A DNA stretch of 63,684 nt, counting the filler, from Octopus bimaculoides (taxonomy: Eukaryota), in the NCBI RefSeq assembly GCF_001194135.2. It is 5 parts of 5 records of this genome, joined end to end, with 100 filler letters (N's around TTAATTAATTAA, not from the genome) between each part and the next. Parts side by side here need not be neighbours in the genome. Positions count along the whole stretch, not along the records: positions 42,186 to 45,200 come from NC_068989.1; 4 more parts are not named here. The stretch is one strand, 5' to 3'. Shown piece after piece: positions 42,495 to 45,200 of this stretch. Every line of letters starts with the position of its first letter. Within the stretch, counting starts at the first letter, position 1. The notes below the pieces were generated by a model. It was given only the letters and a program-made list of their open reading frames with translations. It was not told the DNA's origin and searched no databases. The translations under genes and the position numbers were made by a program.

Positions 42495-42564
42495 CCATGT
42501 TGTTATTCAGCCATGTTGTTATTCAGCCCGGTTGTTATTCAGCCATGTTGTTATTCAGCCCGGT
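42495..42564. repeat. 16-bp tandem repeat, four full copies plus a partial
   Basis: ccatgttgttattcag / cccggttgttattcag units. Confidence 0.9.
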
Positions 42565-42591
42565 GCTATTATTATTATTATTATTATTATT

Positions 42592-42649
<58 letters not shown>

Positions 42650-43597
42650 TTATCATTATCATCATAGCTTTTACCCTAAACCTGTTCGTATTTCACGCTT
42701 GATTCAAATTCACTCAATTCTCTGTAAATACTGACATCCTTATTTTTAACCATCGATTCAGGTCAACTGTGTGAGTCGATGAAGCGGCTTATATCTTGTT
42801 TATTTTTAAACGTTGGTTCAGCTAAAAAATCTCCTATATCGGTTTATATTTCTGTTGCTTAGATTTCTTTTCTATTGAACTCTTTATCATTCATTCAAGC
42901 CAATACTATTGGATCGACATATCTGTAAAAATAAAACAAATAATTTTTCTGGTTCTCTCTTCCAATATCGGAAACAATTGTACTTGTTGTAGTTGTTTCT
43001 GCTACTGTTGTTGTTGTTGTTGTTGATGTTGATGATGGTGCTGTGAGACAATTATGTGATTAGATTTAAAATAATGGCGGTGGATAATAGAGTAAGTAGA
43101 ACAACAGACATTAGGGCGGTGAAAGATAAACTTTATAAAACGACAGATTTGTATCTTGCAATGTTGCATTATGTTCCTTTTACGTATTAAATCTAGCCCT
43201 CATCATTGTGAATTTTGTTTTCAGTCCTCGAGAGGAGATGGCTAGATGCCGAGAGAAATCAACAACTACAACCATACCGCAAAAAAAAAGTGTTGTTTTA
43301 TAAAGGATGTACACCCCGTCTATTTCTTTACCTAACTATCAGTCTGTCTGTCAATTTATCTTTATATTATTCTCTTTCTCTGTGTATATATATATGTACA
43401 TGTATCCGCATTCACACTCTCTCTGCCTTTCTCTCTCTCTCACGCACATACATACACACACATTTATATATACATGCATACATACATGCATACATACATA
43501 CATACATACATACATACATACATACATACATACATACATACGTACATACATACATACGTACATATATATTATATTATATTATATTATATTATATTAT

Positions 43598-44069
43598 ATG
43601 GGTGGCTAATTCGCAACCTTACAACCTAAAGGCAGAGATATATACTAAAATGAACAAGGGTACTAATCAGTACTTGTATTGCTAGAAATAACAGTCGAAA
43701 CAGCTCAGTAACCACAAAAGCCCTATCTTAATCAGCTGACAAGGGAGGCAAACTCCTTACGGTCGCAGTTAGAACCAGATCACCGATGATTTCGTATTTT
43801 GATGCTTGGCACATCTTAATGCTCATCAGTGGCTCTTATTGCGCCTAAGGTTAAACTCATCTCAGCTTATAAAATTTTCGGTGAAATCAGACGTTAATTT
43901 CATAAACGGTAAAAATGAAAATTATAAATAATATGGGTGGCTAATTCGAAATTTTACAACTTAAAGGCAGAAATATATGTCACTAAAGTGAACAAGGGCA
44001 CTAATTTGCACCAGTATTGCTAGAAATAAGAGTTAAAACAACTCAATAGTCACAAAAGCACTACTTAAT
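43598..44069 (-). mobile_element. Retrozyme-like element: ~335-bp unit plus ~135-bp terminal direct repeat around a hammerhead
   Basis: 43598-43732 and 43933-44069 are direct repeats (~80% by eye, offset 335 bp) flanking a complete hammerhead. Confidence 0.65.
43755..43850 (-). ncRNA. Type I hammerhead ribozyme with extended stem I
   Basis: Minus strand reads ccuua-gg-cgca-aua-agagcca CUGAUGA g[cauuaa-gaugu-gccaa-gcauc-aaaaua]c GAAA uca-ucgg-uga UC ugguucu-aac-ugcg-a-cc-g-uaagg. It has an intact core, 7-bp proximal stem I, 4-bp stem III, G-C closure of stem II and an AUC cleavage triplet. Confidence 0.88.
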
Positions 44070-44159
44070 GAATAAAAGTATGTATACCTTTATGTAACGT
44101 CATATATGTACACATACACTGATATATACACATACAGGCATACATACATAAATACATGC

Positions 44160-44361
44160 ATATTTATATAAGAGCATTACTATAGAATAATGACACACAC
44201 TAGACTTCCAAAATAAACACATTTTTACCGAATTCGAGAAAAAGCAACTCTTAAAAAAAAACTACCTTTTTAAAACCTTTTCCTCGAATTCGGTAAAAAT
44301 GTGTTTATTTTGGAAGTCTAGTGTGTGGCATTATTCTGTAGTAATGCCCTTATATAAATAT
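44160..44361. repeat. Long inverted repeat / fold-back (~85-bp arms, ~32-nt spacer)
   Basis: 44160-44244 versus the reverse complement of 44277-44361, with about 4 mismatches. Confidence 0.9.
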
Positions 44362-45169
44362 AAATGAATAAATATATTCTTGGGAATAAAAAAATGATGG
44401 GTTTTTTTTCCCTTATGAATTTTTTACACACTAGCTTCCTGATAAAATTCTTATAAAAGATTTTTATTCCATTATTGAATTAAATACATGCATACGTAGA
44501 GACAAATACCGATATATCAGATGCTACACAGCAAACATTTTTGTCTTATTAAAATTATCTTCTCCTCTAATGAATGTATCATAATTACTAAATGTTATTA
44601 AAGCCTTCCGCCAATCGAGAATTCTCCAAAACTGACATACCTTTCAGGAAAAGGACAGGTTTATGGTCTGGAGAGATGAAATCGGACAATTGTCCTTCCG
44701 ATGAAAACTACTGAGCCAGAAACACGTGTCCACTACTGTCTTGTTATCTCTTGTCTCTTTCCTTCAACGCATATCAATTTTGGAGAAATTCTTTGGTTTT
44801 TGAGATTTCCACTTTATAAATGAAACTGGTTTTTAATTACAAATTTGTAATTGTGACATACGGTCCAGAGACAGAAATAATTGTAATGAGTCAAGAATTT
44901 CTTGTATGACATTCCAAATATCTGTATTTATGTATGATATTCAAATACATGCCTCTGGCCATATCAAGTCATAATTCTTAAATCAAGCGCGCCTAAATTA
45001 TGTGTGTGTTTGTGTCTGTGTGTGAGTGCGTGTGTGTATGTTTATCTTTGTATATGTCATGTATCTATGTCTATATCTGAACAATAAAATTGCCCCTCCT
45101 GTTTTTTCCCAGGATAGCTTGTATTTCTATTGTATGTAAAAGCACTCCCATATACAAACTTTTAGACAT

Positions 45170-45200
<31 letters not shown>

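What the first reader, a model, noticed from the sequence alone, without database searches (positions are those of the whole stretch)
43755..43850. Complete type I hammerhead ribozyme with extended stem I
Seen on the minus strand: CUGAUGA (43823-29), GAAA (43790-93) and an AUC triplet with predicted cleavage between 43778 and 43777. Stem III is A-U/U-A/C-G/A-U with a UCGG loop. Proximal stem I is agagcca/ugguucu, followed by an aua/aac internal loop and distal cgca/ugcg and ccuua/uaagg helices. Stem II is G-C closed with an apical gaugu/gcauc helix; its middle is partly mismatched. Established: the stem I internal loop with loop II is the tertiary contact that lets natural type I hammerheads cleave fast at low Mg2+. 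This is a full ribozyme rather than the minimal Penelope type.
Basis: partly seen in the sequence, partly recalled or inferred. Interest (0 to 1): 0.88.

Follow-up and report, generated by a model that had tools for sequence, protein, structure and literature searches.

The report
Hammerhead ribozyme in a retrozyme-like repeat
The hammerhead ribozyme motif is really there and is not chance, but it sits in one worn, 1.4-unit copy of a ~335-bp repeat, the setting long known for animal "retrozyme" elements, so it is an ordinary member of a known class whose activity is untested.

Summary
These are CUGAUGA, G10.1/C11.1, GAAA, a 4-bp stem III with a UCGG loop, C17 with cleavage between 43778 and 43777, a 7-bp stem I, an internal loop and an 11-bp distal helix.

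Chance is excluded. A descriptor search of 1.2 Gb of random sequence gave no match of this quality. None of 23 core-plus-stem-III matches in 596 Gb of prokaryotic DNA had a stem I longer than 4 bp.

Rfam does not accept it. The best hammerhead-clan hit is Hammerhead_HH9 at 17.6 bits, against a gathering score of 52. Stem II is atypical: 29 nt with C·A and A·A mismatches, where published retrozyme hammerheads have 4 bp plus a 5-6-nt loop.

The ribozyme lies in a ~335-bp AT-rich direct repeat present as 1.4 units. The second, 5'-truncated unit is 83% identical, with mostly transitions. The insert sits among microsatellites in non-coding eukaryotic DNA. This fits a decaying insertion of an animal non-LTR retrozyme. 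With a single ribozyme, the locus cannot release a unit-length RNA.

No other copy could be reached, so conservation, covariation and activity remain untested.

The parts
43755..43850 (-). Type I hammerhead motif including the extended stem I (96 nt)
   Evidence: Sequence read. My descriptor matches it. It gives a sub-threshold Rfam HH9 alignment over 43755-43846. Fold energy is -31.6 kcal/mol, z -4.2.
43823..43829 (-). Core box C3-A9 (CUGAUGA)
43794..43822 (-). Stem II, 29 nt: G10.1-C11.1, C·A, three A-U/U-A pairs, an A·A/A·A internal loop, a 5-bp apical helix GAUGU/GCAUC and loop GCCAA
   Evidence: constrained fold. It is much longer than the 4 bp plus 5-6-nt loop of the published coral, mussel and axolotl retrozyme hammerheads.
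43790..43793 (-). G12 A13 A14 A15.1 (GAAA)
43779..43790 (-). Stem III hairpin: AUCA/UGAU, loop UCGG
43777..43778 (-). Predicted scissile bond, 3' of C17 (43778) and 5' of U1.1 (43777)
   Evidence: Position follows from hammerhead numbering applied. Cleavage itself was not tested.
43830..43836 (-). Proximal stem I, 5' strand AGAGCCA (pairs with 43771-43777)
43771..43777 (-). Proximal stem I, 3' strand UGGUUCU
43840..43850 (-). Distal stem I helix, 5' strand. It lies beyond the internal loop AUA (43837-43839) / AAC (43768-43770) and pairs with 43755-43767.
   Evidence: The helix appears in the MFE fold and in the constrained fold.
43598..43932 (-). Full repeat unit (~335 bp, 37.5% G+C) that contains the hammerhead
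   Evidence: Direct repeats D5 and D6 have start-to-start spacing of 335 and 338.
43933..44069 (-). Partial second unit. It lies upstream in RNA sense, is 5'-truncated and lacks the hammerhead part. Identity to 43598-43732 is 83%.
   Evidence: Differences are 17 transitions and 6 transversions.
43565..43599 (.). (TATAT)7 simple repeat abutting the 3' end (RNA sense) of the element; possibly a tail
   Evidence: The interpretation as a tail is inference.
43446..43568 (.). (ACAT)n microsatellite on the left flank. A similar ~50-bp stretch lies on the right flank at 44121-44170. This may be a split microsatellite or a long target duplication.
   Evidence: Inconclusive because the sequence is low-complexity.

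Best explanation
This is a genuine hammerhead-ribozyme sequence of type I topology. It is carried on the minus strand by one old insertion of a ~335-bp, AT-rich, non-coding repeat in a eukaryotic, most likely animal, genome. That is the setting described for metazoan non-LTR retrozymes.

The life cycle of the family is taken from the literature and was not shown here:
1. Tandem units are transcribed.
2. Each hammerhead folds (stems I, II and III around the CUGAUGA/GAAA core) and cuts its own chain 3' of C17. This leaves a 2',3'-cyclic phosphate and a 5'-OH.
3. The unit-length linear RNA is circularised, mainly by an RtcB-type tRNA ligase.
4. The circle is copied by a reverse transcriptase borrowed from autonomous elements, probably Penelope-like. 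The cDNA, longer than one unit, is integrated.

The locus here holds 1.4 units: a 5'-truncated partial unit followed by a full one. This is what integration of a longer-than-unit cDNA would leave.

The locus has only one ribozyme. At most it could cut a read-through transcript once, between 43778 and 43777. It cannot release a monomer or a circle. The two units have diverged by 17%, mostly by transitions. The copy is therefore most likely a decaying, non-propagating descendant. The mismatches in its stem II may be decay, or a family-specific long stem II.

Shown here: the motif, its non-chance status, the repeat, and the non-coding context.
Inferred: the retrozyme life cycle, the age of the insertion, and whether this copy is active.
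For: - Motif and coordinates are confirmed.
- Chance is excluded. No random match of equal quality occurred in 1.2 Gb. None of 23 core matches in 596 Gb of real DNA had a stem I over 4 bp.
- The 96-nt segment folds far better than shuffles (z -4.2). The stem I helices persist in both the free and the constrained fold.
- Repeat context: a ~335-bp unit is present as 1.4 copies at 83% identity, with 17 transitions and 6 transversions. The unit has 37.5% G+C.
- Published definition: type I hammerheads of animals lie in 150-450-bp, low-GC tandem repeats that lack LTR, PBS and PPT. Mussel units are 350-390 bp; newt and axolotl units are 330-350 bp (PMC7229834).
- Monomeric copies are common and are read as non-transposing offspring (bioRxiv 10.64898/2026.07.22.740005).
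- The junction '..CA-CUGAUGA.. H|UG..' is shared with the cloned, active coral, mussel and axolotl ribozymes.
- The alternative helix that hides the core costs 7.9 kcal/mol. The proven-active mussel ribozyme pays a similar 7.4.
- A mismatch at the base of helix II has a precedent in axolotl HHR_Amex2, which still cleaves.
- The surroundings are non-coding: no Pfam hits, no tRNA, many microsatellites.
Against: - No second copy from any other locus or genome could be retrieved. Family size, consensus, conservation of the ribozyme above background, and covariation are all untested.
- Rfam places it far below threshold: 17.6 bits against 52. Scaled linearly to a single family over a 1-Gb genome, that score alone would be expected about 60 times by chance.
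- Stem II is irregular and unlike the canonical type I.
- There is only one ribozyme and only 1.4 units, not a tandem array.
- The unit folded as a circle is not more structured than shuffles (z -1.06, 63% paired). Published retrozyme circles are described as highly self-paired.
- The source organism is unknown.
Confidence: 0.7

Rival explanations
1. The hammerhead belongs to another kind of retroelement rather than to a free-standing non-LTR retrozyme. Candidates are the terminal repeat (pLTR) of a Penelope-like element, or a SINE-like element of the Schistosoma Sm-alpha type. The ribozyme would trim the element's transcript.
For: - Retrozymes and PLE terminal repeats are reported to be homologous, and monomeric derivatives are frequent.
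- The element ends, in RNA sense, in a simple-repeat tail and is 5'-truncated, like products of target-primed reverse transcription.
- Sm-alpha is also about 335 bp (from my own knowledge, not tested here).
Against: - There is no reverse-transcriptase or endonuclease coding remnant within the 3-kb piece.
- PLE hammerheads are described as minimal variants; from my own knowledge their helix III is near-absent. This one has 4 bp plus a tetraloop.
- A type I hammerhead lies upstream of its cut. A once-cut linear RNA would therefore lose the ribozyme. The head-to-tail junction at 43932/43933 shows the template was longer than one unit.
Confidence: 0.17
2. The hammerhead is a host-domesticated ribozyme, for example an intronic or UTR processing element like the amniote HH9/RECK hammerhead. 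It would be kept by selection at this locus.
For: - The best Rfam alignment is to HH9 and reproduces the same stem I layout: 6-7 bp, an internal loop and a distal helix.
- The catalytic core is intact although the neighbouring repeat sequence has diverged 17% between copies.
Against: - The score is far below the HH9 threshold.
- The motif is embedded in a decaying repeat among microsatellites, with no exon nearby.
- An intact 16-nt core is not surprising under neutral decay. At about 8% change per site the chance is roughly 0.3 (inference).
- No orthologous sequences were available to test conservation.
Confidence: 0.05
3. The motif is a chance resemblance in AT-rich repetitive DNA.
For: - There is no Rfam hit at threshold.
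- The thermodynamically best fold is not the hammerhead fold.
Against: - Random and real-DNA nulls give an expectation well below one per gigabase for this quality.
- The distal stem I helix and the stem II hairpin come on top of that.
- The repeat context is the one in which such ribozymes are known to occur.
- Proven ribozymes show the same kind of misfold penalty.
Confidence: 0.03

Closest known systems
Metazoan non-LTR retrozymes with type I hammerheads (Cervera & de la Pena 2020, PMC7229834), e.g. Mytilus galloprovincialis 350-390-bp units, Acropora millepora 220-240-bp units, axolotl 330/350-bp units
   Same: - The hammerhead is type I, with the CA-CUGAUGA...H|UG junction.
- The unit length (~335 bp) lies within the 150-450 bp range.
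- G+C is low.
- There is no LTR, PBS, PPT or coding capacity.
- Units are arranged head to tail.
- Stem I has an internal loop and a distal helix.
   Different: - Only 1.4 units and one ribozyme are present here.
- Stem II is 29 nt with mismatches, not 4 bp plus a 5-6-nt loop.
- Stem III is longer (4 bp) than in the mussel, coral or axolotl ribozymes.
- There is no sequence similarity outside the core to the published clones.
- The predicted circle is not unusually self-paired.
- Expression and circularity are unknown.
Rfam Hammerhead_HH9 (RF02275), the amniote intronic type I hammerhead
   Same: The core is the same. The stem I architecture also matches: a proximal helix, a 3-4-nt internal loop and a 5-bp distal helix, aligned end to end.
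   Different: It scores 17.6 bits against a gathering score of 52. Stem II does not align (19 nt are treated as an insertion). The genomic setting is a repeat, not a conserved intron.
Schistosoma Sm-alpha and newt satellite 2 hammerheads (classical type I ribozymes in ~330-bp repeats)
   Same: The repeat size is ~330-335 bp, the DNA is AT-rich and repetitive, and the topology is type I with a loop in stem I (reviewed in PMC6155905).
   Different: - Those ribozymes have a short stem II whose apical loop docks on the stem I loop. Here the apical loop is too far from the core.
- Newt stem III is very short and works as a dimer. Here stem III is stable.
- Sequence comparison with these two was not run. 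The resemblance rests on the review and on my own knowledge.
Minimal hammerheads of Penelope-like elements
   Same: They are type I, animal, retroelement-borne and possibly ancestral to retrozymes.
   Different: PLE motifs are minimal variants; from my own knowledge they have a near-absent helix III and no loop-loop contact. This motif has full-length helices. No PLE coding sequence is nearby.

Membership tests
Hammerhead ribozyme, type I | Invariant catalytic core: C3 U4 G5 A6 N7 G8 A9, G12 A13 A14, A15.1-U16.1, H17 (the CUGANGA / GAAAY / RUH rule) | tested here: met
   The sequence reads CUGAUGA, GAAAU and AUC at the right places. The rule is quoted.
Hammerhead ribozyme, type I | Three helices around the core, with helix I open-ended and helices II and III closed by loops | tested here: met
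   Stem I is 7 bp plus an 11-bp distal helix. Stem III is 4 bp plus UCGG. Stem II is closed by G-C and capped, but has 3 mismatched layers out of 12.
Hammerhead ribozyme, type I | Match to a curated covariance model at its gathering score (Rfam clan CL00010) | tested here: not met
   There is no hammerhead hit at E<=10 in the 3-kb piece. The best clan member in a 161-nt sub-window is HH9, at 17.6 bits against 52 (E 0.045).
Hammerhead ribozyme, type I | Loop 1 / loop 2 tertiary contact of natural fast-cleaving forms | tested here: inconclusive
   The stem I internal loop AUA/AAC lies 7 bp from the core. The apical loop of stem II is 12 layers out. Only the A·A/A·A internal loop (layers 6-7) is at a matching distance. 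No three-dimensional or covariation test was possible.
Hammerhead ribozyme, type I | Site-specific self-cleavage 3' of position 17 | not testable with these tools
   This needs in vitro transcription or mapping of RNA ends. The thermodynamic penalty of the active fold (7.9 kcal/mol) is within the range of proven ribozymes (2.9-7.4), so it does not decide.
Metazoan non-LTR retrozyme | Type I hammerhead inside a head-to-tail repeat of 150-450 bp | tested here: met
   The unit is ~335 bp with a head-to-tail junction at 43932/43933. Only 1.4 units are present.
Metazoan non-LTR retrozyme | Two or more ribozymes in tandem, so that a unit-length RNA can be excised | tested here: not met
   There is one hammerhead in the piece. 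The partial unit lacks the ribozyme part. This is a property of the locus, not necessarily of the family. Monomers are common.
Metazoan non-LTR retrozyme | Low G+C, non-coding, no LTR/PBS/PPT | tested here: met
   The unit has 37.5% G+C. It holds only short ORFs without Pfam hits. There is no terminal repeat structure beyond the unit itself.
Metazoan non-LTR retrozyme | Many dispersed or tandem copies in the genome, with the ribozyme as the best-conserved part | not testable with these tools
   No eukaryotic genome collection was available. Protein-word, exact-ORF and DNA-pattern routes all returned nothing.
Metazoan non-LTR retrozyme | Highly self-paired circular RNA | tested here: not met
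   The circular fold of the unit has energy -70.9 kcal/mol, z -1.06 against shuffles, and 63% of bases paired. Decay of this copy could explain it. Existence of the RNA was not testable.
Penelope-like element minimal hammerhead | Minimal motif with a one-base-pair helix III, in tandem pairs next to RT/GIY-YIG coding sequence | tested here: not met
   Helix III is 4 bp plus a tetraloop. There is a single motif and no coding remnant.

The most novel reading that the evidence does not exclude
The long stem II is not decay but the family's design. This would be a type I hammerhead subclass in which the stabilising tertiary contact is made between two internal loops: A·A/A·A in an extended stem II and AUA/AAC in stem I. 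In the classical type the apical loop 2 docks on the stem I loop. The 8-bp alternative helix that hides the CUGAUGA box could then act as a built-in switch that keeps the ligated circle from re-cleaving.
Probability: 0.12. Interest if true: 0.5.

Novelty: new member of a known kind. Interest (0 to 1): 0.28.

Why it matters
Type I hammerheads in short animal repeats have been known since 1987. Since 2020 they have been understood as retrozymes that make abundant circular RNAs. One more copy adds little by itself.

It would matter modestly in two cases. First, the family might prove large and active in its host, giving a new source of ribozyme-made circRNA and a marker for Penelope-like activity. 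Second, the unusually long, internally looped stem II might prove to be a conserved, functional variant of the loop-loop contact.

As it stands, the locus is best annotated as a retrozyme-derived repeat with a probably relict ribozyme.

Tried and rejected
**Attempts to reach other copies (all empty)**
- Exact look-up of six ORFs of the piece in the assembly index found nothing.
- A protein search used a 370-aa concatenation of all stop-free six-frame segments of the repeat. It gave 2500 word candidates, none at E<=10.
- DNA-pattern scans of metagenome contigs found nothing, with a hammerhead-specific pattern and with a repeat-block pattern.
- Scans of viral contigs found nothing.
- A scan of prokaryotic genome contigs with the repeat-block pattern found nothing.
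- The relaxed hammerhead pattern found 23 prokaryotic sites. All lack stem I and look like chance matches. I used them as an empirical null, not as relatives.

**Literature**
- A full-text search for six sequence words found only unrelated primers.

**Ideas considered and rejected**
- I considered that the 8-bp alternative helix (ACUGAUGA with UCAUCGGU) argues against activity. I rejected this after the control on proven ribozymes gave similar penalties.
- I considered a tRNA-derived SINE head. ARAGORN finds nothing, and the B-box resemblance is too weak to claim.
- I looked for remnants of further units elsewhere in the piece. There are none.
- I considered building my own covariance model from the four published clones. 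I did not: MAFFT put one of them out of register, and three sequences would add little to the Rfam test.
- The mir-297, mir-1277, WsnRNA46 and similar Rfam rows are artefacts of microsatellites and of a long hairpin element.

Full report
**1. The observation**

| Element | Coordinates (minus strand) |
|---|---|
| CUGAUGA | 43829-43823 |
| G10.1 / C11.1 | 43822 / 43794 |
| GAAA | 43793-43790 |
| Stem III | AUCA 43790-43787 with UGAU 43782-43779, loop UCGG |
| C17 | 43778; the scissile bond would lie between 43778 and 43777 |
| Proximal stem I | AGAGCCA 43836-43830 with UGGUUCU 43777-43771 (7 bp, one G-U) |
| Internal loop | AUA / AAC |
| Distal helix | 43850-43840 with 43767-43755 (11 bp, two single-base bulges) |

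The distal helix appears in both the free and the constrained folds. Stem II spans 29 nt. Its layers are G-C, C·A, A-U, U-A, U-A, A·A, A·A, then a 5-bp helix GAUGU/GCAUC with loop GCCAA.

**2. Is it more than chance?**

It is the only CTGANGA...GAAA site in the window. I wrote a descriptor requiring the core, the G10.1/C11.1 pair, stem III of at least 3 bp, U16.1, H17 and stem I of at least 5 bp. I ran it on 1.2 Gb of random sequence with the composition of the piece. It gave two matches at the relaxed setting. It gave none at the quality seen here, stem I of 7 bp and stem III of 4 bp.

As a null from real DNA, I scanned 596 Gb of prokaryotic genomes with the pattern CTGATGAGN{15,40}CGAAATCANNNNTGATC. 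It has 23 matches. Their longest stem I is 4 bp, and most have 0-1 bp. The distal helix and the stem II hairpin come on top of this. The 96-nt segment also folds much better than its shuffles (z -4.2). Chance can be set aside.

**3. The formal family test fails**

Scanning the whole 3-kb piece against Rfam at E<=10 gives no hammerhead family. With laxer filters on a 161-nt sub-window, the best member of the hammerhead clan is Hammerhead_HH9. It scores 17.6 bits against a gathering score of 52, E 0.045.

The HH9 alignment matches the core and the whole stem I architecture. It treats 19 nt of stem II as an insertion. By linear scaling, 17.6 bits for one family over a 1-Gb genome would be expected about 60 times by chance. 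The covariance-model score alone would therefore not carry the call. The descriptor nulls and the context carry it.

**4.

The hammerhead lies inside a direct repeat with a start-to-start spacing of 335-338 bp (families D5 and D6).

- The full unit is 43598-43932.
- A second, partial unit at 43933-44069 aligns with 43598-43732 at 83% identity.
- The differences are 17 transitions and 6 transversions. This is the spectrum of neutral decay.

In RNA sense (minus strand) the order is a partial unit truncated at its 5' end, then the full unit, then a (TATAT)7 simple repeat. The partial unit does not include the ribozyme part, and no further remnants exist in the piece.

The insert is embedded among microsatellites. 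An (ACAT)n-like stretch of about 50 bp lies on both sides: 43522-43573 and 44121-44170. It may be a split microsatellite or a long target duplication. Low complexity makes this undecidable.

The rest of the piece is non-coding. It has only short ORFs without Pfam hits, no tRNA, several microsatellites, and a 178-bp hairpin element with an 8-bp target duplication. The piece has 32% G+C and the unit has 37.5%. This is eukaryotic, probably animal, repetitive DNA (inference).

**5. What it is**

The published description fits. Most classical type I hammerheads of animals lie in 150-450-bp, low-GC tandem repeats without LTR, PBS or PPT, called non-LTR retrozymes. These are transcribed, self-cleaved, circularised mainly by an RtcB-type tRNA ligase, and presumably retrotransposed (PMC7229834). 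Units are 350-390 bp in mussel, 330-350 bp in axolotl and newts, and 220-240 bp in coral.

A 2026 preprint relates these elements to the terminal repeats of Penelope-like elements. It reports that monomeric derivatives are frequent and probably cannot transpose.

The cloned, active coral, mussel and axolotl ribozymes share the junction CA-CUGAUGA ... H|UG with this one. Their stem II is 4 bp with a 5-6-nt loop, and there is no similarity outside the core.

The head-to-tail junction shows that the template of this insertion was longer than one unit. That would be expected from a multimeric or circular RNA template.

**6. Can this copy work?**

Points for activity:
- The core is intact.
- Stems I and III are sound. 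Stem III is more stable than in the mussel or axolotl ribozymes.

Points against or unclear:
- Stem II has a C·A mismatch next to the closing pair. There is a precedent in axolotl HHR_Amex2, which has a U·U mismatch at the base of helix II and still cleaves, though slowly.
- The minimum-energy fold is not the hammerhead. ACUGAUGA pairs with UCAUCGGU, giving -31.6 kcal/mol against -23.7 for the enforced hammerhead fold.

I first read the alternative fold as evidence against activity. I then ran the same calculation on proven ribozymes.

| Ribozyme | Penalty of the active fold (kcal/mol) |
|---|---|
| Coral | 3.6 |
| Mussel | 7.4 |
| Axolotl Ax353 | 2.9 |
| Axolotl Ax330 | 6.4 |
| This candidate | 7.9 |

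The argument therefore does not discriminate.

The apical loop of stem II is 12 layers from the core, and the stem I loop is 7 bp away. If there is a contact, the A-rich internal loop of stem II is the better-placed partner (inference).

Folded as a circle, the unit is not unusually structured (z -1.06, 63% paired; I used a 333-nt permutation, two bases short of the unit). This fits a decayed copy, but it is also a point against a typical retrozyme RNA.

My estimate that this copy cleaves measurably in vitro is about one half. In any case, one ribozyme cannot excise a unit.

**7. What could not be done**

No collection of eukaryotic genomes was available. I tried four routes:
- exact look-ups of six ORFs;
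- a protein search with concatenated six-frame segments of the unit;
- five DNA-pattern scans of metagenomic, viral and prokaryotic collections;
- a full-text search for sequence words.

None retrieved a relative. Copy number, consensus, conservation, covariation, host species and expression therefore remain open.

**8. Verdict**

It is a real type I hammerhead sequence with an intact core and an extended stem I. It is not a curated-model member, its stem II is atypical, and its activity and tertiary contact are untested.

The better description is a relict 1.4-unit copy of a retrozyme-like repeat. It is a new member of a known kind. Interest is low to moderate, and would rise only if the long, internally looped stem II proves to be a conserved functional variant.

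Noticed in passing
window 44164-44357: A 178-bp hairpin element lies at 44172-44349. Its long near-perfect terminal inverted repeats fold at -105.6 kcal/mol. It is flanked by an 8-bp direct repeat, TTATATAA, at 44164-44171 and 44350-44357. This looks like a MITE with a hAT-type target duplication. The sub-threshold Rfam rows WsnRNA46, mir-9457, MIR1888 and rox1 all fall on it and are artefacts of the hairpin.
   Followed up: partly
window 43446-43568, 44109-44162, 45150-45200: These are (ACAT)n microsatellites. The sub-threshold mir-297, mir-1277, mir-3149 and mir-466 Rfam matches fall on them and are low-complexity artefacts.
   Followed up: partly
window 42495-42659: A 16-bp minisatellite, CCATGTTGTTATTCAG, is repeated 4.1 times. 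It is directly followed by (TAT)31.
   Followed up: no
window 42984-43037 and 45001-45041: There are (TTG)n/(TGTTGA)n and (TG)n simple repeats. About a tenth of the 3-kb piece is simple sequence, which points to a microsatellite-rich eukaryotic genome.
   Followed up: no
window 44622-44657 / 44752-44787: A 36-nt inverted repeat, 78% complementary, has arms 94 nt apart (I2). Its meaning is unknown.
   Followed up: no
window 43780-43830 (minus strand): The 5' strand of stem III plus its loop (UCAUCGGU) is complementary to ACUGAUGA. This gives an 8-bp helix that stacks on stem I and hides the catalytic box in the lowest-energy fold. It could be an accident of stem III ending in UGAU, or a conformational switch.
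   Followed up: partly
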